From positions 236,357 through 300,356 of the forward strand of contig NW_019217962.1 of the NCBI RefSeq assembly GCF_002571385.2: DNA of 64,000 nt, given 5' to 3'. This stretch comes from Stylophora pistillata (taxonomy: Eukaryota). The notes beneath the pieces were generated by a model. The model saw only the letters and a list, made by a program, of their open reading frames with translations. It ran no database searches and was not told the origin of the DNA. The position numbers and the translations under genes are program-made. Shown piece by piece: positions 1 through 12,075 of this stretch (position 1 is its first letter; each line of letters opens with the position of its first letter).

Positions 1-4
1 AATG

Positions 5-54
<50 letters not shown>

Positions 55-470
55 TTAATATTTATATTGCGCAAATTAACATGTGGATATGATCAAATGC
101 GCATCACAACACTTTTCGGGGGACTTTGGCCGGACTGCATCAGCAGTTTACAAACAATCGAAGGAAACTTATTTGAAGATGCCCCCTCCCCCCAATTCCC
201 AGTAAACAGGCCAGACCACATCACAGTAATCTCGTGAGTGGGTTCTTTAACGTCCCCTGCCTAACCAAATTAACTAATTAATAGATGCAGGAGACGGGAC
301 CTACGGTTTATTCGTCCTTATCCGAGAAGACTAGAATGTCTATCCATTTCTTGATATTATAGAAAGGTAGCGCATTCTCCTCAGTTATTTTAAGACCTTG
401 AGTGTTGGTCCGGCCGGGGCTCGAACCATCGACCTCGACCTCCCGCACAACAGTCCAGCGCTCTAACCAA
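1..470 (-). mobile_element. tRNA-derived SINE, copy 1, with (ATT)n tail
   Basis: Minus strand reads TTGGTTAGAGCG (A-box end) ... GGTTCGAGCCCC (B box), then a core shared with the copies at 2810-3252 and 61218-61530; it ends in the (AAT)n run at 1-53. Confidence 0.85.
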
Positions 471-663
471 GAAATAAGAAAGTCCAAAGCAAAATAGATC
501 GTTCTCGTCCATAAACGACACAAACTTCCCACTGAATGCTATCCACTGTGGCTTGGGTTAAAAAAAATGAGGTAGTGATTTTGATTTAATTTGAAATCTT
601 CCGATCCTATCAAGCAGATTTTTCTCACTACAGTTTAACTGTCATTTTTCGATCATGCTTCAG

Positions 664-3600
664 CCAATCAGAAGAGATGGAGTCTATGCCACAGATCTCT
701 TCACTCAGGAGGCTATAAAAAAGATCAATGCTCACGATAATTCTAAACCAATGTTTCTGTACCTCGCTCACCAAGCAGCGCATTCAGCCAATAAGAACGA
801 TCCTTTGCAAGCACCACAACACCTTATTAAGGTAATAGAATCAGTTTAATACTCGATAAATACTGTTTTGCATAAGTTAACGTGGACAGCATCTAACTCA
901 TACTGAAACATACCAAAATGAATTTTAAAAATGGATATCAATTACAGACACAACCTTTCAAATTACTGCCGAAAGCCAGGGGTGTAGTAAAGCAAAAAAG
1001 GAAACTAGAGAAATCACTAAAAACCCTTTACAAGTGCGAATTATTTGAGCAATAAAATAATTATAGAGATGCTACCTTATTATATTTAAGAGGAACTATA
1101 TCTTTGGCAATGGGACAGTCTTCTTTTAAGTATGCTGCTGCAAAAGACTGGAATGATCTGCCAACTCTAGGTTCGACTGATTGGTTTAAATCAGGATAAA
1201 AAAAGATTATTATAAGATGATTATAAGTTTCATCCGCAATCAAACATGTAAAGTCCATCTACGTCCATCAAAAAAAAAACAAAAACAAAAACAAAAAAAC
1301 ACCATACTGATGCTGAAATAGCTTATGTTATCATTGATTTACTTTGTCATATCATACTGTCAGTTCATACTTTAATTTTCATTTTTAATAGTAACGTACA
1401 CTTGTCACAAAATCTTTTCAGTGATCAGTCACTTTACGGTCTTTCTTAAGAAATTCAGTTTTATCAAAGACGAAAGAAGACAAAAGTACGCTGCCATGGT
1501 GACATCATTAGACGAATCGGTCGGAGCCGTGAGGCAAGCACTCGCTGATAAAGGGATGCTTCAGGATTCCGTTATCATATTCACCACTGACAACGGAGGA
1601 GCTCCTTATGGATTTAACTGGTAATTATTTTTACTTGTTATTACTCCTAGTGTAGTTCGTAAAAAATGGCAAAAATTTGATGTTCATTCAACCCGACAAT
1701 GGACAGTTAAAAAGAAAATTTACAACAATTAACAAATCGATTATAATAATAATAGTTAGTGTCGTCGAGTTTTCATTCAGAACTGTTAGCTTTGTAACAA
1801 AAAGCCCCGATTATAACTTCGTTTTCAACGAGGACATAACAGTGCTTTAGTCTAACAAATTGTGTAACAAAAATTAGTGTTGGCAAATTGACGTCGGTAC
1901 TGAGTCTGGACCACTAGTGTTGGTGAATTAACCTGAGGTGTCGTCAAGTTGACTAATGATGTCGGCGAGTTGACATATCGGGAAAGTGACTGGTTAACCG
2001 TAAAGACAGCGTATGGAGTTCGTACATAAAGTTCATTGTAGATTTATTTTCATTTAAAAACAAACATTTTTGACCCTCGTGTATAATTTCAAATAGGAAT
2101 GCTGGCTCAAACTTCCCTTTCCGGGCAGGCAAAGACACCCTGTGGGAGGGTGGGGTGAAAGGTGTTGGTTTTGTCTACACTGCTAATGATCTCATCAAGC
2201 AGAAGAAGCGTGTGTGCACAGGACTGATTGATGCAACAGACTGGGCAGCGACTCTATACCACTTAGGAGGAGGTAATGCAGAACTTATATCGGCCAGGAC
2301 TGACGGAAAAAACGTTTGGGAGACGATATCGAACGACGCTCCATCACCTCGGGACGAAGTGTTGCATAATATAGACCCCAGGTAAGCCTTAGAAGTTTCC
2401 TAATTTTTAACTGCAATTACGAGTATTACTAGATTAAAGAAAGTGAGGCAAGTCGGAGACCATTCACTTCGAATGGCTTGATTGAACTTGCGTTGTTGCA
2501 ATAAGGGTAAAAGTTTAATCCACACCTGCTCGGTAGTGGTAGGATCAGTGTGAACTGGAAGGAAGTAGAGCCAAGAAATTTGGTGCCGGAATCATTCTAT
2601 CCTTTGGAAAGACTATAGTTATTTACGACTTTAACCCTTAAATCCCTTGGAGTGATGGGCATATATTTTCTTCCGACACTGTTATCCCTGAATCAAACAC
2701 TTTTAAGGTCACGAGAAGAAAGGAAATTTATCGTGAACTCAAGAAGCTTTTGATTGTTAGATAAATTCTCCCTATAATCACCATAAGAAATTCACAGAAC
2801 TTGTGAATAAAAGTGAATGATTCGATCACTTAATAGCAGCATAGGCTGAATTGCTAAGGTCTACAGTGTTACTAAGGTTGAGATCGGACGTCAGCATTAT
2901 CAGGCGCCTCTGGCAGCCGCTTTAGTCCATGTAACGACCTCACCTTTTCCCCCACACATCCCACCCCAGGGGAGGACATCCATCACACAGTAATCTCGTG
3001 AGTGGGTTCTTTAACGTCCCCTGCCTAACCAAATTAGCCAATTAATAGATGCAGGAGACGGGACCTCCATTTATTCGTCCTTATCCGAGAAGACTAGAAT
3101 ATTCATCCATTTCATTGATGTTATAGAAAGGTAGCAAATTCTCCTCAGTTATTCTAAGACCATGAGTATTGGTCCGGCCGGGGCTCGAACCCTCGAACTC
3201 CCGCACAACACAATCCGGCGCTCTAACCAATTGAGCTAACCAGGAGGCGGTTGCCTACTGATTGAAGCCTACTGATTGTTGCCTACTGATGCTAGGGCAT
3301 AACAGGTTAAGTAGTTGATTACGAGTCGTTGATTAAAAATGAGGAACGGAGAGTTTTAGAGGTCATGTCAAACGGACTGGTTCTAGTGGTGTTGGTTGAG
3401 CGGACTCACTGAGTTGTGTTTGGACCAAAACGACAATTTCTCTACCTTGTCAGTAGAATATACGGTGGAGCGGCAATAGACTGGCATTCTGCAACTCAGT
3501 AAGCCACTACTTAGCGCATCGATCGTTAAAAACAACAAAACAGACAACTTAGCTTTGCAAACGGTGGGGCAGTCCATATGTTGTTTAAAGTACTGCTACG

Positions 3601-6600
3601 CTTTCTTCGATCGCAGAGAAAATCGGACGGTTACGAAGTGTTTAGAAACCTTTTATTTGTACTTAAATCGGTTCTCCTGTCACACAGGGTTTCCATTCGG
3701 GAAAAAAGTAGCGAATGTATATAAAAGCTAATAGCGGAAAGGAACAGGAGAATATTCTCAATAAGCAGGCTTTAAAGGAGGGTTCTGAATAGTAATCTTG
3801 ACTATGAAACCGTACTTAGAATAACTGGGGTCTGTGAATCTTGAACCTTCTCGTATTCAGAACATGCTAGTAAAAAAAAATGACGTATAAGACTCTTTAT
3901 GGAATTGCTCCACCATATCTCGGATCACTACTGGAAGAACGAAAAACGGCGTATAACCTCAGACGCTCAAATCACAACTAAGGTGATGAGCTTCGCCCGA
4001 AGGCTAAGTGCATGGCAACCCCAGTGTAGAGTGCTCAATCGCAAGGTAGCCAAAAGGCAAAGCCAAGCGAGAGCTATCTAATATATATATATATATATAT
4101 ATAACTGCAGACAGTGCACACTGTTTCGACCTATGTGGGTCTCATCAGTGCAGTGCAGACACTGGGCCAAGCTCTGGAATAAACCATTGCCTGGGCGCTA
4201 CACTTGTGGGACCAAGTGCAGGCATGTTGCCATGTGAGAGTGCTCAAATCACAACTAAGGTTATTTCTTAAATGTTAATTATACTCGGAGATACTAGCTC
4301 TCGGCTCGAGCTTTATTCTAAATCCGAGTTTAAATAAAGTTATATGTACGTATGTATGTATTGTCCAAGACTGGATAAAAAGAAACCTAAGCTATTACCT
4401 TGATGAGCATCTTGTCACATTCTACCTCACAAGTCCATTCAGCAATGTCTGACGGAAGTTATGACCATGCCATCGAATAATCGCGTCTTTGCTCGACGGA
4501 TGAATCAGCGATCGACTGAAAGCAGAAATTTATTTTCTAACCATTTTCCCCAATTTTTTTAACGGCTGGGAGAAATGATTAGTGAGTCTTTAAGGCCCAC
4601 GTATTCTCTCAGAGAAGATAAGTTGCTTCCATCTTTGATACTAAGCAACATATCAGGCGAGTCTCCTTATGTGTTGCTATCGAAGAGCAACACGTAAACA
4701 ATTTGTGATATAAAAGGGCACAAAACTGGATCAAACTCGATTGTTAGTGATAGTAAAGAACAGCTTCTCTCTACCGACTGTTGGCTGTTTGTCGGCTGAC
4801 AGGTTTTCTGAGTCTGCCTAATAGTTGCCCGATTCTCTGGGATGTGGACCAATCACATGTGTTCTTAAAATTTCATATGACACCAGGCATAATAATTTTA
4901 ACTATTGATTGATTTTAACGATGTAACCTCTAATATTCTCACCTTACGCTCAGACGGAATTTTGAAGCCATCCGCAAAGGCAAATTCAAGCTTGTGGTCG
5001 GGATGGATGATACGTACCAGCTGGGATGGCACGCAAGATACCCAACAGAACATCCCCCTCCCTGGCAGGCAAATCCAACACTTCCCGGAGCAGAAATCCA
5101 GTGTGGCCAGTGGACGAATGGCGAAGGCATGTGCGACTCAAAGCATCACAAAGCTTGTCTTTTTGATCTTGAAAGCGGTAAGAAAACAGTAGCAATTAAC
5201 CAACTTAATAGCTTGATATAGAAGACTCTTACCGTGCTTGTTGAAATTACAAGAACCTAAATCATGCATACATGTGTAAGCATATTCTCATGCATGACAG
5301 ACATCTTAAAATTAAAAAAAAAGGAATATCGATCCTTTTCCTTAAAAAATGAGAGCGGTTGATGTTGACATCAGCTGATGTAGTCTGTATGAAGCACCAT
5401 TTTCTGGCTTTTTCAACCTCCATAGGTTAAGCGCAAAGTAAGTACTTCACCTTACTGGCTACTCTTTGGTGAACTCTAAAGAAAAATTTTTACTGCATGG
5501 TGATATAAGAGGTAGAGATGGAGAACTTGAAGAAAACTATGAGGTTGTTCTTTTGCAATCAACACAACCAAGTATAATTATCACTACCCACAAACAAAAA
5601 AACAAATAACTTATCTCAGTCTTCCCTTTTTCAATTTTGTTGTATTCAAAGCTGTATACCTATACCTATCATAAAAGAAATTCAGAGATTCCCTTATTGC
5701 CAAAATGGATAAATATTACACCTGCCACAACTTGTGTTTTCACCGATGAAGTTTAATTGAAATGTATAAATATAATCACTGACAATATTCACTTTGAGTT
5801 TTGAACTGAGATAACCTGTCCCCATGATTTTCTAACCAAATATAGCAAACAAGAAGCTCCAATTTTTTGCTGTTTTTACTTTTTTCCTACAATAATGTGA
5901 ACAGGTCAAAGTAAAAGTCAGTTAGAAAGTTCATGCTCTGTCATATAGATGGCCTCAGGAAAGACATCACTGTAGATTCATATAAAAAATACTGGAAGAT
6001 GAAGAGATGTTGACATCAATCTGTCTTGCTATAAAAGAGTCTGACTTTAAAACATTTAAGTCCTTTTAAACAATCATCTACCACACAAACCAAAAGAGAA
6101 TTTATACTCCTTAGGCTGTTTTTTTTTTTTTTTCTTTTTTCCCAGAAACCTCTCTCTCCCACCTCTTACACAAATCATTAAATAGGCTCAAAGCTAGGAT
6201 TTTATTGCAACTAAGATAATTGACTGTTTATAAATATATCTTATTAACCAAGCGCATGGGTCGTAGTGGAAGAATATCGGCCCGAGGTCTTTTTTGTATG
6301 GACCTCCCGGCGCTCGGTCTGTACAAAAGAGACCGAGGGCCGATATTCTTCCAGTATGGTCCTGGGCAAGCTTGGTTAATAAGAGATTTATTGTACAACT
6401 GAAGTTCAAAGGGATATAAGTGCAGTATCATTCGGGACCATTCGGGACAGTGCCGGGTCCAATACTTAGAGAATATTGACTGGCAATAGAGCATTTTGAT
6501 TGATTGATTTTAGTTATTGGCCCTCTGACTGCCTGAGTCGTGTAACAAAGGATTGAATTACACCCTACTAGTGGAGAAAACTGAAAACAGACTGTGAAAA

Positions 6601-9073
6601 TTTCCTTAAAGCCAAGTTTATACAATTAGCTTCAGGGTAGAAAGATAGTGTACATGTAAAATAGTGGTACATTTATATGCCAAATATGGTACATTGAGTG
6701 ATTATCCATCAACTATTTTTGCCTGCATGCAATTGGTCTAAAATCATCACATGACTGAGTATTCCCCAACTCAGACACTTGTCCTTGGACATCTATTTCT
6801 CAAAACTCACAGTTTTCCTCATGCTTCACTCCCAGAAACTGTTCATTTCTCAGAACAGATAATGTCCACAGACAAAGATCAGCTCATATTTTTCACAACA
6901 AATGGAGTTTATTGGCAATACAATTATTATTAGCCTTTCAATATCTTGGAGTTTCTCATAAACATAATGTCATAAGATGTCACTTACAGTGTCATTTGCT
7001 TAGATAACATTTCCATGTGACCTGTCAGTTTACCCGGACTAAAATATTGCCATTTGAAGTAACCAGCTGCAACTATCCCAATTATCAAAATATCATTCTG
7101 CTTAAAAATTGTTTGCACGACCCCTAGTTTTTGGTTGAATTTCATTTCATAATTTTACTTGCTTCCAATGCTTTAATCTGGGGTTTACACTGAAAAACTG
7201 CCAAGCTAAATACCGGGTATCAACAATGACAATTTGCATTCACTTTCCTACCATGAACATCATATTTGACCCTTGAACTCCCAGAAGTGACTTACACGTA
7301 TCAACTTCTTATAAAATCAATATACACTATCAGCAAACAAGTGATGAGAGTATACTCCAACTTATCACATTTTGATCTAACACCAAATTCTTGTAACTAA
7401 TCTACAAGAAAATGTGTAACAGCCAGAGGACCACGATTTTTAGCGGGGCTCCCACACATGCGTGGGGCAGAGCCCCATACCCATGGAATATGGTCAACCT
7501 CTTTTCATTTGGTTGCCACGTGACTGACCGAGCATACGTATGTATGTACATACGTACATACGTGCCTAAGGGAAGGGTGACTCAGGCGAGTCTTGGCATA
7601 TTCACATCTTTTATGTTATCATTAATATTATGAACTTGGGAGCTCTGCTTTTAGGCTTGGCTAAATCTATATATTAAATTGTTAAAAAAATTAGATCTAG
7701 GCAGTTAATTAAAGGGTTAAGCAATACTGGACTTTCTCCAAGTTTACATACTTGATACCTCATCTAAACCCAAAGGTGAATGGGTGAATTTGTGATGGTA
7801 ATGTAAACCCATAACAAAGTCAACGAATTTGAATAGCTTTTGAGAATCCTTCCATTCTCCTGACAATTTAGATGAGGCTGTGTAAACGCAGTAAAAGTCT
7901 TCCGTTATTTTTATGAAATGTTGCAGGTAAATACCTTCGAATTTAAAACGTCTCTGGAAATGATGTTTACCTATTCTAGCTCTTGAGAAAAACAACCAGT
8001 GACCAATGATATTCGTAAAATACAGGTATTGGCACAAGGATCAAACGTTTCACTGTTTCTGGTTGATCATAATACAACTAGAGAAGTTCAAACATTGCCA
8101 AACATTGACTTCATTCGATTGTACTAAAAACGGGAGAAATTATTGGTCAGGTCGAATCATTGAATGAAATGAACAAAATATATATTTGCCTGTGCATACT
8201 TCTGACAGTGAAAATCCTGTTCAGGTCGAATCATTGAGTGAAATGAACAAAATATATATTTGCCTGTGCATACTTCTGACAGTGAAAATCCTGTTTTGAA
8301 AGTCAAAGTGCGATAAATAATGAGTCCTAATTTGATTTCAAAGGTTTGAATACAATTATATACTAATAAGGTATCGCTTTTCGCAATAAAAGCTAGGTTG
8401 TTTGTCATTTTAGACAAATTCTTACCTTTTTCAGCAGCAGTCCTCAATAAATACCAGCAAAGTACCAAAATGTGACTGTGAATAAAAGCAAAGTTCCACT
8501 GACTCGGTAAAAACTTTGAGGCAGAGCTTGTATTGTCCATATGTTCCAAGCCAGAAGTCTCCCTCTCTCAGACTAGGTTTACACTAGAGGAGAGTTTTCC
8601 GGATTCGTAAATGTTTCCGGATCCATCAATTTTGGAGTATTCGGATTCGTAGGCGTTTACACTGAAAGGATATTCGGATTCCTGACCGTTTATACACAAA
8701 GGCAACGCCCTATCAAAAGCTATAGCTCTAAGACAAAACATGTTTCTGCTCCTTATCGGTAAAACTTTGAAATGCTCATTTACTCTCGTTTCCAGATCCC
8801 TGTGAATACAAGGATGTCTCGGACGTCTATCCGCACAAGGTTCAGGAGCTGAAAGAGAGGCTTAACTACTACCGCAGCACGGCGCTGCCAGTTGTTTATC
8901 CAATGATCAGCCCCAAAGCAGATCCAAAACATTTTCATAGTTTCTGGGGTCCCTGGGAAAAACTCAGAGATAAGTCGGAGTACTTTGCTGCAAAGAGAGC
9001 TTGTAACGTCGTGCATCAAAAACAGGTCCAGTTTGGTTTACATCGAATGGTATACTCCAATCAAACTCAGTGA
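664..9073 (+). CDS. Arylsulfatase (ARSB/ARSI/ARSJ-type), 5'-partial; exons 664-831, 1451-1620, 2097-2381, 4954-5177, 8796-9073
   Basis: All exons have AG/GT boundaries and join in phase. Spliced peptide contains YATDLFT, KPMFLYLAHQAAHSAN..PLQAP, YAAMVTSLDESVG, IIFTTDNGG, GSNFPFRAGKDTLWEGGVKG, SPRDEVLHNID, AIRKGKFKLVVG, CLFDLESDPCE and FWGPW, typical of ARSB-type sulfatases. The CxPxR active-site exon would lie upstream of the window. Confidence 0.92.
1110..1165 (+). mobile_element. L2/CR1-group LINE ORF2 C-terminal remnant
   Basis: Translates as MGQSSFKYAAAKDWNDLP, matching the SF.Y.A.K.WN.LP terminal motif of these LINEs. Confidence 0.6.
2810..3252 (-). mobile_element. tRNA-derived SINE, copy 2, with complete head
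   Basis: Minus strand TAGCTCAATTGGTTAGAGCG (A box) and GGTTCGAGCCCC (B box); about 250 bp closely similar to copy 1. Confidence 0.85.
3740..3964 (+). mobile_element. Degenerate L2/CR1-group LINE ORF2 3' fragment; probable 3' UTR resumes at about 4262-4340
   Basis: 3882-3964 translates as TYKTLYGIAPPYLGSLLEERKTAYNLR (YK.L.G.AP.YL...YNLR motif). 4262-4340 ends in AATAAA plus a (TATG)n-like tail. The 5' boundary is approximate. Confidence 0.65.
3965..4261 (-). mobile_element. Retrozyme-like 277-nt monomer with 20-bp terminal redundancy
   Basis: GCTCAAATCACAACTAAGGT occurs at 3965-3984 and 4242-4261. The unit encloses a hammerhead ribozyme and a (TA)n tract and has no credible ORF. Confidence 0.8.
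4104..4154 (-). ncRNA. Type I hammerhead ribozyme
   Basis: Minus strand: ACUGCA-CUGAUGA-GACC(CACAUA)GGUC-GAA-ACAGU(GUGC)ACUGU-C/UGCAGU. The core is complete, the three stems pair perfectly, and the cleavage triplet is GUC (cut between 4110 and 4109). Confidence 0.93.
6239..6384. mobile_element. Short MITE-like element
   Basis: Perfect 15-bp terminal inverted repeat TCTTATTAACCAAGC / GCTTGGTTAATAAGA, with internal partial symmetry (GAATATCGGCCC / GGGCCGATATTC). Confidence 0.7.
8147..8294. repeat. Tandem duplication, 2 x 74 bp
   Basis: TCAGGTCGAATCATTGA...GAAAATCCTGT starts at 8147 and again at 8221, with very few differences. Confidence 0.9.
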
Positions 9074-11043: not shown

Positions 11044-12075
11044 TTAACTTTCACTTTCGATTGCCTCCATGTTGGGTACAGCAGTATGGCCGTTAGATCC
11101 TCGATGTTTACGTTGGTTCATGTAGCCACTGATCGCGGATCCTCGTCTAGTGAGGTACATACTGACAGAGGAGCCCCGTCGGCTGTTCCCTACAGTCTGC
11201 TCTAAATAAACCCGATTAAAAAGTCGCTTGAATGCTCGCCTGTATGTGCGATTCATACAAGTGTATATCACAGGGTTCAAACACGAATTTAAGTATTCCA
11301 TCCACTTGAACATGTTGTAAACTTCCATTGGGTAAGTGAAATTTTTGTTCGTTGCATGACCCACCACAATAATGAAGAATGGAAGCCAACAAATAACGAA
11401 AGCGCCAATGACAACTAAGATGGTCTTTGCTGCCTTCATCTCGTTTGCATGTTCTTTCCCTCCAGCTGATCCAATTCTGTGCACTTGGATTTTGACAACG
11501 ACAAAGATTACAGTGTACATCACGATTACAAGTGACAAGGGAATAAAGAAACTTGCAAAAGCCGCAAAAAGGCCATAGCTGCTCCAATTGGCCAGTCGTA
11601 GAGAGGCGATGGTAGTGGAGTACAACCAAACCAGTGCGAGGATAATTAAGACTCTCTTGGTGGTCAGTATCTTTGGATACTTGAAAGGTGTCACGATTGC
11701 CAACATTCGATCAATACTGACTGCTGTAAGATTCATAATAGAGGCTGTACCACAGAAAATGTCGACGAAATTCCAGAAGGGATACAATCCCTCTTTCAAC
11801 CAAGGCCACGGCCAACTTGTATTATTGAGCTGAACTATGAGCCAGAACGGCATAGCTAACAGAGCAACCAAAATATCTGCCACACTTAAACTAACAATAA
11901 AATAATTACAGATCGTTCTGAGGTTAGGAAAAGTGTAGAAACTGATACACACAAGAACATTTCCAAATAGAGTCACCAAGATCAATATGCCGACGAAGAC
12001 GGCCGCAACGATGCTACTCGGAGTAGGATTTATGCCAGTAGGGGGAGAACCCGTGATATTTCCTGCCTCAGACAT
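11044..12075 (-). CDS. Class A (rhodopsin-like) GPCR, biogenic-amine-receptor-like, 343 aa, single coding exon
   Basis: Seven hydrophobic segments with GN (TM1), SLSVAD (TM2), DIFCGTASIMNL..SIDRM (TM3), W (TM4), FFIP (TM5), CWLPFF (TM6) and NSCLNPVIY (TM7). N-terminal NIT sequon. A splice acceptor at 12109-12110 implies upstream 5' UTR exon(s). Confidence 0.95.
   Translation of the reverse strand: MSEAGNITGSPPTGINPTPSSIVAAVFVGILILVTLFGNVLVCISFYTFPNLRTICNYFIVSLSVADILVALLAMPFWLIVQLNNTSWPWPWLKEGLYPFWNFVDIFCGTASIMNLTAVSIDRMLAIVTPFKYPKILTTKRVLIILALVWLYSTTIASLRLANWSSYGLFAAFASFFIPLSLVIVMYTVIFVVVKIQVHRIGSAGGKEHANEMKAAKTILVVIGAFVICWLPFFIIVVGHATNKNFTYPMEVYNMFKWMEYLNSCLNPVIYTCMNRTYRRAFKRLFNRVYLEQTVGNSRRGSSVSMYLTRRGSAISGYMNQRKHRGSNGHTAVPNMEAIESES

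What the first reader, a model, noticed from the sequence alone, without database searches (positions are those of the whole stretch)
3965..4261. Intact hammerhead ribozyme in a 277-nt terminally redundant unit (retrozyme-like) inside a sulfatase intron
Seen: a complete type I hammerhead on the minus strand (4154-4104) inside a unit bounded by a 20-bp direct repeat with a period of 277 nt. Established: non-LTR retrozymes in cnidarians and other animals are short hammerhead-containing repeats that produce small circular RNAs. Inference: this is a slightly-more-than-one-unit cDNA copy of such a circle. The ribozyme is antisense to the host gene, so it would not cut the sulfatase pre-mRNA. With a single ribozyme, this locus alone could not excise a monomer.
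Basis: partly seen in the sequence, partly recalled or inferred. Interest (0 to 1): 0.8.

Follow-up and report, generated by a model that had tools for sequence, protein, structure and literature searches.

The report
Coral hammerhead retrozyme copy, oddly integrated
This is a real, intact self-cutting hammerhead RNA motif inside a copy of a small mobile repeat (a "retrozyme") already known from corals; the copy is ordinary in kind but was pasted in an unusual way, replacing part of an older jumping-gene fragment inside a sulfatase gene intron.

Summary
Rfam calls a complete type I hammerhead at 4154-4104 on the minus strand (38.6 bits, cut-off 34). A 20-nt direct repeat (3965-3984 and 4242-4261) gives a 277-nt period.

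The segment belongs to a young, dispersed family in this coral genome, with at least 93 scored matches out of 455 candidates. Its canonical unit is 254 nt and forms tandem arrays of up to about 4.5 units. Typical copies end at hammerhead-TGCAGT-(TA)n. They have variable 5' ends and lie in (TA)n microsatellites. This fits metazoan non-LTR retrozymes (Cervera & de la Peña 2020) and Penelope-like insertion.

The window copy is atypical in three ways:
- It replaces about 232 bp of a 5'-truncated LINE fragment.
- Its joints are blunt or carry one filler nucleotide, with no (TA)n target.
- It carries a 23-nt (TA) run exactly at the family's integration boundary, which accounts for 277 rather than 254 nt.

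It lies in intron 2383-4952 of an arylsulfatase-like gene and is antisense to it. With one ribozyme it cannot release a monomer.

I read it as a longer-than-unit cDNA captured at a DNA break. A circular template is compatible but unproven. This is a new member of a known kind, and the scan has already found such elements elsewhere in this genome.

The parts
3965..4261 (-). Retrozyme-derived segment of 297 nt, which is one 277-nt unit plus 20 nt of redundancy. The ribozyme sense is the minus strand.
   Evidence: Matches to genomic arrays cover the query 1-297. Junction searches show that family homology starts exactly at 3965 and ends at 4261. It differs from the 254-nt array unit by one substitution plus a 23-nt insertion.
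4104..4154 (-). Type I hammerhead ribozyme with an intact core.
   Evidence: RF00163, 38.6 bits against GA 34, full model. It is identical to the commonest variant in the family. Helices stay paired across subfamilies, with one compensatory A:U to G:C change in helix II.
4109..4110 (-). Predicted self-cleavage site, after GUC and between 4110 and 4109.
   Evidence: Position of the GUC triplet before the 3' strand of helix I in the Rfam alignment. Inferred, not assayed.
3965..3984 (.). Left copy of the 20-nt terminal redundancy.
4242..4261 (.). Right copy of the 20-nt terminal redundancy.
4081..4103 (.). A 23-nt (AT)11A run inserted exactly between TGCAGT (the end of the hammerhead) and TAGATAGC (the start of the unit). 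This is the family's normal 3' integration boundary.
   Evidence: Internal array units read TGCAGT|TAGATAGC with no TA run. A pattern search finds this ribozyme-(TA)n-unit-start junction only in the window.
3757..3963 (+). Left part of a 5'-truncated LINE (non-LTR retrotransposon) fragment, encoding the end of ORF2.
   Evidence: 84-89% identical to other copies. Longer copies continue upstream into an RT ORF (RVT_1, E 5.6e-14).
3964..3964 (.). A single filler nucleotide (C) at the left joint. It fits neither the LINE nor the retrozyme.
   Evidence: Comparison of the window with LINE copies and array units.
4262..4361 (+). Right part of the same LINE fragment: the 3' UTR tail ending in a (TATG)n-like microsatellite.
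   Evidence: At least 35 genomic matches, 85-96% identical. In intact copies about 190-330 nt of LINE sequence (232 nt in L032) lie between the two parts.
2104..2382 (+). Upstream arylsulfatase-like exon with a donor site AG|GTAAGC at 2382/2383.
   Evidence: tblastn with a paralogous sulfatase from this genome: 52% identity, E 7.6e-25. Sequence read.
4953..5167 (+). Predicted next sulfatase exon. It is in frame, has an AG acceptor at 4952 and a GT donor at 5168.
   Evidence: Motif scan and splice signals. There is no Pfam or tblastn support, so this exon is inferred.
8795..8956 (+). C-terminal sulfatase exon.
   Evidence: tblastn, E 1.8e-8 to residues 451-504 of the paralog.
4399..5057 (-). 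Two exons (5057-4943 and 4515-4399) of a minus-strand spliced transcript. It continues below 4399, so its next intron may contain the ribozyme in sense.
   Evidence: One 1273-nt contig in run X2 with the joint 4515/4943. The splice sites are canonical GT..AG only on the minus strand.

Best explanation
Window 3965-4261 is a dead-end copy of a young hammerhead retrozyme family of this coral genome.

The family: it is a non-coding 254-nt unit with a canonical type I hammerhead, and it occurs as tandem arrays and dispersed copies. Normal copies have a fixed 3' end, hammerhead-UGCAGU-(UA)n. Their 5' ends vary, they are often longer than one unit, and they sit in (TA)n microsatellites. cDNA synthesis therefore starts 6-8 nt downstream of the ribozyme cut site, on an uncut multimeric or religated circular RNA, primed from a nicked (TA)n target. 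Such a target is what Penelope-like GIY-YIG endonucleases prefer.

The window copy did not arrive that way. A cDNA 297 nt long (more than one unit) replaced about 232 bp of an older 5'-truncated LINE fragment. Its template carried a (TA) spacer between the ribozyme and the unit start. The joints are blunt or have one filler nucleotide, which suggests end-joining capture at a DNA break.

The locus has one ribozyme, antisense to the arylsulfatase-like host gene whose intron it occupies. It can cut a minus-strand transcript once but cannot release a monomer or circle.

Shown: the motif, the family, its insertion signature, the LINE replacement and the intron position. Inferred: self-cleavage, a circular or multimeric template, the break-repair route and the Penelope-like helper.
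For: - Motif: Rfam hit above gathering score. The helices covary and stay paired across subfamilies: 95% of cells paired against 16-39% with slid partners.
- Family size: at least 93 scored matches of 455 candidates. There are 62 Hammerhead_1 hits genome-wide, most of them in this family.
- Arrays: 254-nt spacing on contigs C28, C589, C199, C547 and C137.
- Insertion signature: fixed 3' boundary, variable 5' ends and TA-rich flanks.
- The circular fold of the unit is -103.6 kcal/mol, z = -8.7 against shuffles.
- Window copy: one substitution plus a 23-nt TA insertion relative to the array unit. Both junctions are unique in the genome.
- LINE context: intact LINE copies have about 232 nt where the retrozyme now sits. 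The LINE parts are 6-9% from the consensus of other copies. The LINE carries an RT.
- Possible helpers in the same genome: abundant RT + GIY-YIG elements. A Neptune-like family has its own hammerhead and 3' ends that abut (TA)n.
- RNA: contigs from RNA runs cover 3965-4070 and 4112-4261 at depth 30-155, against about 0-4 in the flanks. They run on into sequence unlike the window's flanks.
- Literature: PMC7229834, PMC8557442, bioRxiv 10.64898/2026.07.22.740005.
Against: - No biochemical proof of cleavage or circularity.
- The RNA evidence is contigs only, from poly(A) or unlabelled libraries. It shows no strand, ends or back-joins, and carry-over of a multicopy DNA repeat is not excluded.
- No source locus with a ribozyme-(TA)n-unit junction exists in the assembly. 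Many TA runs end in assembly gaps, however.
- No Penelope-like element shares the retrozyme's 3' sequence. One apparent adjacency (L056) spans a gap, and intact copies of that element have an unrelated 3' UTR.
- The age gap between LINE and retrozyme is weak when measured against the closest LINE relative (96% over 97 nt).
- The unit's GC content is 52.8%, above the <50% described for metazoan retrozymes.
Confidence: 0.8

Rival explanations
1. The chimera formed during retrotransposition of the LINE itself. The LINE reverse transcriptase copied about 100 nt of the LINE 3' tail and switched to a retrozyme RNA. It copied one unit plus 20 nt, which would require a circular or multimeric template, and then switched back to the LINE RNA 232 nt further upstream.
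For: The retrozyme segment sits exactly between two collinear LINE parts in the same orientation. RT template jumps can give blunt joints with a non-templated nucleotide, such as the filler at 3964. The closest LINE relative is 96% identical in the tail, so the LINE copy need not be very old.
Against: It needs two switches. It also needs a retrozyme RNA of the polarity antisense to the ribozyme, because the LINE is on the plus strand and the ribozyme on the minus. The LINE parts are 6-9% from the consensus of other copies, while the retrozyme part has one difference in 254 nt. No second copy of the chimera exists.
Confidence: 0.15
2. A DNA-level event. A break in the LINE fragment was repaired by copying from a genomic tandem array (ectopic gene conversion or templated repair), or by reinsertion of an extrachromosomal circular DNA of the repeat. 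No RNA intermediate was involved.
For: Tandem arrays that could serve as donors exist. The segment spans the ribozyme cut site uncut. Nothing in the sequence demands an RNA step.
Against: There is no homology or microhomology at either joint. No array in the assembly has the internal TA spacer. A linearised monomer circle would give exactly one unit, not one unit plus 20 nt.
Confidence: 0.12
3. The segment is merely satellite DNA, or a piece of a Penelope-like element's pseudo-LTR, and not a separate non-autonomous element.
For: Hammerheads also occur in the 3' regions of Penelope-like elements in this genome. Arrays resemble satellites.
Against: Copies are dispersed on at least 60 contigs, with a defined 3' boundary, 5' truncations and TA targets. 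The two Penelope-like families examined have unrelated 3' sequences. No ORF accompanies the arrays.
Confidence: 0.05

Closest known systems
Metazoan non-LTR retrozymes (Cervera & de la Peña 2020, NAR; PMC7229834), including those of the coral Acropora millepora
   Same: Canonical type I hammerhead. A short non-coding unit of a few hundred nt in tandem arrays from dimers upward. Dispersed copies, a strongly self-paired predicted monomer, and co-existence with Penelope-like elements in the same genome.
   Different: The unit is 254 nt, against 220-240 nt reported for A. millepora. GC is 52.8%, not below 50%. Sequence relatedness to the published coral units could not be checked, and the ribozyme string is found in no held paper. 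The window copy itself is a single 1.07-unit piece integrated non-canonically.
Penelope-like elements with 3' hammerheads and a (TA)n target preference (Arkhipova 2006; Craig et al. 2021, PMC8557442)
   Same: The same insertion signature: (TA)n targets, 5' truncation, tandem products, and a hammerhead close to the 3' end. A Neptune-like family with these traits is present in this genome.
   Different: The retrozyme has no RT or GIY-YIG ORF. It shares no 3'-terminal sequence with the two PLE families examined. The helper relationship is inferred.
Endonuclease-independent or break-repair capture of retroelement cDNA (e.g. L1 ENi insertions, Morrish et al. 2002; from my own knowledge)
   Same: No target-site duplication, loss of target DNA (about 232 bp), a non-canonical 3' end, and blunt or filler joints.
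   Different: The captured molecule here is a ribozyme-bearing repeat longer than one unit, not a LINE. The mechanism is inferred from the joints alone.
Plant LTR retrozymes (Cervera et al. 2016; PMC4918200)
   Same: Non-autonomous retroelements whose hammerheads process transcripts into circular RNAs.
   Different: The plant elements have type III hammerheads in LTRs, plus a PBS and PPT, 4-bp TSDs and 600-1000-nt circles. None of these features is present here.

Membership tests
Rfam RF00163 Hammerhead_1 (type I hammerhead) | Covariance-model score at or above the gathering threshold over the full model | tested here: met
   38.6 bits against 34, model positions 1-45/45, E 3.2e-6.
Rfam RF00163 Hammerhead_1 (type I hammerhead) | Conserved catalytic core (CUGANGA, GAAA), a cleavable triplet, and three helices with an open helix I | tested here: met
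   CUGAUGA / GAAA / GUC read directly from the sequence. 95% of helix cells are paired across 10 variants, with one compensatory pair.
Rfam RF00163 Hammerhead_1 (type I hammerhead) | Self-cleavage activity | not testable with these tools
   Needs in vitro transcription. Expected products of the 4261-3965 transcript are 152 + 145 nt.
Metazoan non-LTR retrozyme | Type I hammerhead inside short tandem repeats (about 150-450 bp unit, dimers to multimers) | tested here: met
   The family has arrays with 254-nt spacing, up to about 4.5 units with 5 ribozymes on C28. The window copy alone is 1.07 units.
Metazoan non-LTR retrozyme | No LTRs, PBS, PPT or coding capacity | tested here: met
   The unit is 254 nt of tandem sequence without terminal repeats. 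The longest stop-free stretch in a trimer is 101 aa, with no family match sought. No ORFs accompany the arrays.
Metazoan non-LTR retrozyme | Low GC content (<50%) | tested here: not met
   The array unit is 52.8% GC and the window unit 48.0% with its TA run. The window average is 37.6%. This is a descriptive feature, not a mechanistic one.
Metazoan non-LTR retrozyme | Expressed as monomeric linear and circular RNA | tested here: inconclusive
   Family sequence is present in contigs of RNA-seq runs at depth 30-155, with flanks near 0. Contigs show no ends, strand or circular joints.
Metazoan non-LTR retrozyme | Highly self-paired predicted monomer | tested here: met
   Circular MFE is -103.6 kcal/mol against -71.2 +/- 3.7 for 40 shuffles.
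Metazoan non-LTR retrozyme | Dispersed retrotransposon-like copies, with co-existing Penelope-like elements | tested here: met
   Fixed 3' end, 5' truncation and (TA)n sites. RT + GIY-YIG families are abundant.
Penelope-like element pseudo-LTR | Hammerhead-bearing terminal region contiguous with an RT-GIY-YIG ORF | tested here: not met
   There is no such ORF near the window copy. The 3' regions of the two PLE families examined are unrelated in sequence to the unit.

The most novel reading that the evidence does not exclude
The window copy may be a genomic fossil of a free retrozyme cDNA longer than one unit. Such a cDNA would come from rolling reverse transcription of a 277-nt circular RNA variant that carried a (TA) spacer. 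That variant would itself arise when one copy inserted into the (TA)n tail of another. The cDNA would then have been captured by end-joining at a chromosome break rather than by target-primed insertion. If so, retrozyme cDNAs exist unattached to a target, and they can patch breaks and delete host or transposon DNA.
Probability: 0.35. Interest if true: 0.45.

Novelty: new member of a known kind. Interest (0 to 1): 0.3.

Why it matters
It adds a well-characterised family to the known class of animal hammerhead retrozymes, with clean anatomy:
- cDNA synthesis starts 6-8 nt past the ribozyme cut site, at a (TA)n target.
- The template therefore cannot have been the cleaved linear monomer.
- The same (TA)n target type is used by a Neptune-like Penelope element in the same genome.

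These points bear on the open question of which machinery mobilises animal retrozymes and from which RNA form.

The window copy itself has no evident function. Its unusual integration is a small piece of evidence that retrozyme cDNA can enter the genome by a second route.

Tried and rejected
- Shared 3' end with a Penelope-like element. In L056 an RT + GIY-YIG ORF is followed by a 100%-identical unit end, but a 349-N assembly gap lies between them. Intact copies of that element have an unrelated 3' UTR with no unit match. Rejected as evidence of a shared tail.
- Source locus with a ribozyme-(TA)n-unit junction. Only the window matches.
- The 20-nt repeat as a TSD or LINE sequence. I first suspected the LINE ORF ran into it. 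Intact LINE copies read differently after CTCAGA and the repeat is internal to array units. Rejected.
- The idea that the LINE-like flank is a short non-autonomous element because all matches begin at 3757. Other copies continue upstream into RT sequence, so the window copy is simply 5'-truncated.
- Full-text search for the ribozyme string: no paper holds it.
- ARAGORN on window 1-6000 for a tRNA in the abundant repeat at 2850-3276: none found.
- MFE fold of the ribozyme in its 71-nt context: not significant on its own (z = -1.07).
- timed out and was rerun. One search failed on wrong coordinates and was rerun.

Full report
**Observation.** The sequence at 3965-4261 was read directly. A scan of the whole 64-kb window against Rfam 15 gives one hit above gathering score. 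It is Hammerhead_1 (RF00163) at 4154-4104 on the minus strand, 38.6 bits against a cut-off of 34, E 3.2e-6, covering the full model.

The RNA reads ACUGCA-CUGAUGA-GACC(CACAUA)GGUC-GAA-ACAGU(GUGC)ACUGU-C|UGCAGU. This gives a 6-bp open helix I, a 4-bp helix II, a 5-bp helix III and a GUC triplet. The cut is therefore predicted between 4110 and 4109.

The direct repeat is real: 3965-3987 and 4242-4264, 23 nt with one mismatch, spacing 277. A plain MFE fold of the 71-nt context is not significant by itself (z = -1.07). The support comes from the covariance model and from conservation.

**Family.** The window's own assembly is a coral genome of 398 Mb in 5,513 contigs; the runs holding the sequence are labelled coral. 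It holds at least 93 scored matches from 455 candidates of the 297-nt segment. It also holds 62 Hammerhead_1 hits, most of them in this family.

On contigs C28, C589, C199, C547 and C137 the unit is tandemly repeated with a 254-nt period. There are up to about 4.5 units and five ribozymes on C28.

Internal array units read ...CUGUC|UGCAGU-UAGAUAGCUC... with no TA run. The window unit differs from an array unit by one substitution plus a 23-nt (AT)11A run at 4081-4103, placed exactly between TGCAGT and TAGATAGC. This explains why the window period is 277 rather than 254.

The 20-nt repeat is internal unit sequence in every array. It is terminal redundancy of a copy longer than one unit, not a target-site duplication.

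**Ribozyme conservation.**
- The window's 55-nt ribozyme string is the commonest variant among the loci held.
- In an alignment of ten variants from subfamilies of this genome, 95% of helix cells pair, against 16-39% when partners are slid.
- Helix II shows a compensatory A:U to G:C change between subfamilies.
- A sister subfamily with units of about 245 nt has a shortened, palindromic helix III of the minimal kind.
- The 254-nt unit folded as a circle gives -103.6 kcal/mol, against -71.2 +/- 3.7 for 40 shuffles (z = -8.7). This is the strongly self-paired shape described for retrozyme RNAs.
- GC is 52.8%, higher than the <50% stated for metazoan retrozymes (PMC7229834).

**How the family normally inserts.**
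- In ribozyme sense, 18 examined insertions share a fixed 3' end, ...hammerhead-TGCAGT followed by (TA)n.
- Their 5' ends vary, with unit positions scattered and a cluster near the unit start.
- Several are longer than one unit.
- Their 5' flanks are often TA-rich.

cDNA synthesis thus begins 6-8 nt downstream of the ribozyme cut site. The template must therefore have had an intact cut site. It was an uncleaved multimer or a religated circle, not the cleaved linear monomer. That last step is an inference.

This matches the published model of target-primed reverse transcription of circular retrozyme RNA giving tandem cDNA (PMC7229834, Discussion). It also matches the (TA)n preference and near-3' hammerheads of Penelope-like elements (PMC8557442). 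A 2026 preprint argues for a Penelope origin of animal retrozymes (10.64898/2026.07.22.740005).

**Penelope-like elements in this genome.** One very abundant, 97-100% identical RT + GIY-YIG family is present. Its 3' UTR is unrelated to the unit. An apparent adjacency in L056 spans an assembly gap, which I did not fill.

A second, Neptune-like family has a C-terminal endonuclease preceded by a Cys-rich linker. It carries its own minimal hammerhead about 55 nt before a 3' end that abuts (TA)n in most copies.

This second family shares the retrozyme's target type but not its terminal sequence. The helper relationship therefore remains inferred.

**The window copy is not a canonical insertion.** Its flanks are the two halves of a 5'-truncated LINE fragment.
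- Segment 3757-3963 encodes the end of ORF2.
- Segment 4262-4361 is the 3' UTR tail ending in a (TATG)n-like microsatellite.
- Longer copies of this LINE continue upstream into an RT (RVT_1, E 5.6e-14).
- In intact copies about 190-330 nt of LINE sequence (232 nt in L032: the rest of the ORF plus UTR) lie between these halves. In the window that stretch is replaced by the 297-nt retrozyme segment.
- The left joint has one filler nucleotide at 3964 and the right joint is blunt. There is no TA target and no duplication.
- Both chimeric junctions, and the ribozyme-(TA)n-unit-start junction, occur nowhere else in the assembly.
- The LINE halves are 6-9% from the consensus of other copies, while the retrozyme part has one difference in 254 nt. 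The closest LINE tail is 96% identical, so this age contrast is suggestive, not decisive.

My reading is as follows. A cDNA longer than one unit was copied from a template with a TA spacer. Such a template would arise if one copy inserted into the (TA)n tail of another. That cDNA was then captured by end-joining at a break in an old LINE fragment, with loss of about 232 bp.

I considered two rivals and ranked them lower. One is a double template switch by the LINE's own RT. The other is DNA-level repair from an array.

**Host gene.** I searched the gene model exon by exon and did not join the exons.
- Pfam Sulfatase matches 1421-1624 and further exons on this contig.
- tblastn with a paralogous 506-aa sulfatase from this genome gives plus-strand exons at 679-846, 1382-1600, 2104-2379 (E 7.6e-25) and 8795-8956 (E 1.8e-8).
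- The donor site is at 2382/2383.
- An in-frame predicted exon at 4953-5167, with AG and GT signals, places the element in intron 2383-4952.

The ribozyme is antisense to the sulfatase.

**RNA evidence.** Only Logan contigs were available.

Contigs from two poly(A) RNA-seq runs and two probable RNA runs cover 3965-4070 and 4112-4261 at depth 30-155. Most of the neighbouring intron is at 0-4.

The contigs carry 10-41 further letters that do not fit the window's flanks. They therefore stem from other family members, not from this locus.

This shows the family's sequence in RNA libraries. It does not show strand, ends or circularity, and DNA carry-over of a multicopy repeat is not excluded.

One 1273-nt contig in run X2 joins 4515 to 4943. 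Its splice sites are canonical only on the minus strand, and it ends its second exon at a minus-strand GT at 4398. If its next exon lies below 3965, the ribozyme sits in sense within that transcript's intron.

**Comparison and verdict.** The element meets the tested defining features of metazoan non-LTR retrozymes except the descriptive low-GC trait. Expression as circles and self-cleavage could not be tested.

It is a new member of a known kind. Earlier notes of this scan report hammerhead retrozymes and Penelope-like elements between (TA)n tracts elsewhere in this genome. These agree with what I found independently.

Interest is modest. The family anatomy, and the non-canonical break-repair-like integration of this copy, are the only points beyond the published picture.

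Noticed in passing
window 2850-3276 (a related copy at about 308-532): A repeat with very high depth in RNA-run contigs, up to about 30,000 summed word depth. Many contigs run on into tRNA-like sequence. ARAGORN finds no tRNA in window 1-6000. It may belong to the abundant tRNA-bearing repeat family that earlier scan notes describe in this genome.
   Followed up: partly
window 4399-4515 and 4943-5057, minus strand: A spliced minus-strand transcript, seen as one 1273-nt contig at depth 7 in run X2. It has canonical GT..AG sites and overlaps a predicted sulfatase exon in antisense. Its downstream intron may include the hammerhead in sense.
   Followed up: partly
L017/L026 3' flanks, L002 5' flank, L022, L029, L053: A second hammerhead-bearing repeat (core CCTGACGATTGCTTCGCAAGAGGCATGAAACTCAGAG) lies next to several copies of the 254-nt family, across a (TA)n run. 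This suggests that several TA-targeting ribozyme elements nest in each other's tails.
   Followed up: no
L021 168-1030; L053 8679-9964; L058 3864-4671: Sister retrozyme families with periods of about 393 nt and about 245 nt. They share only the hammerhead region (80-87% identity) with the 254-nt family. The 245-nt family has a minimal, palindromic helix III.
   Followed up: partly
G000 C52:990120-991256 and more than 100 other places: A very young (97-100% identical), very abundant Penelope-like family with RT + GIY-YIG, 5,470 first-look candidates. Its 3' UTR holds a hammerhead-like core (…CGACGAAGGGCTAACGCTCGAAACGTC…) and ends at …TTGATATATCCAAAT, without a long TA run.
   Followed up: partly
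window 11044-12075, minus strand: An intronless 343-aa ORF with the look of a rhodopsin-type G-protein-coupled receptor, downstream of the sulfatase gene on the opposite strand.
   Followed up: no
L071 (G000 C254:58830-59630), about 330-640: A small fold-back element between two (TA)n runs. It has two inverted arms, each carrying a minimal hammerhead (CCCCTGATGAGTGGGCGACCACGAAACAGGCTTGTAG).
   Followed up: no
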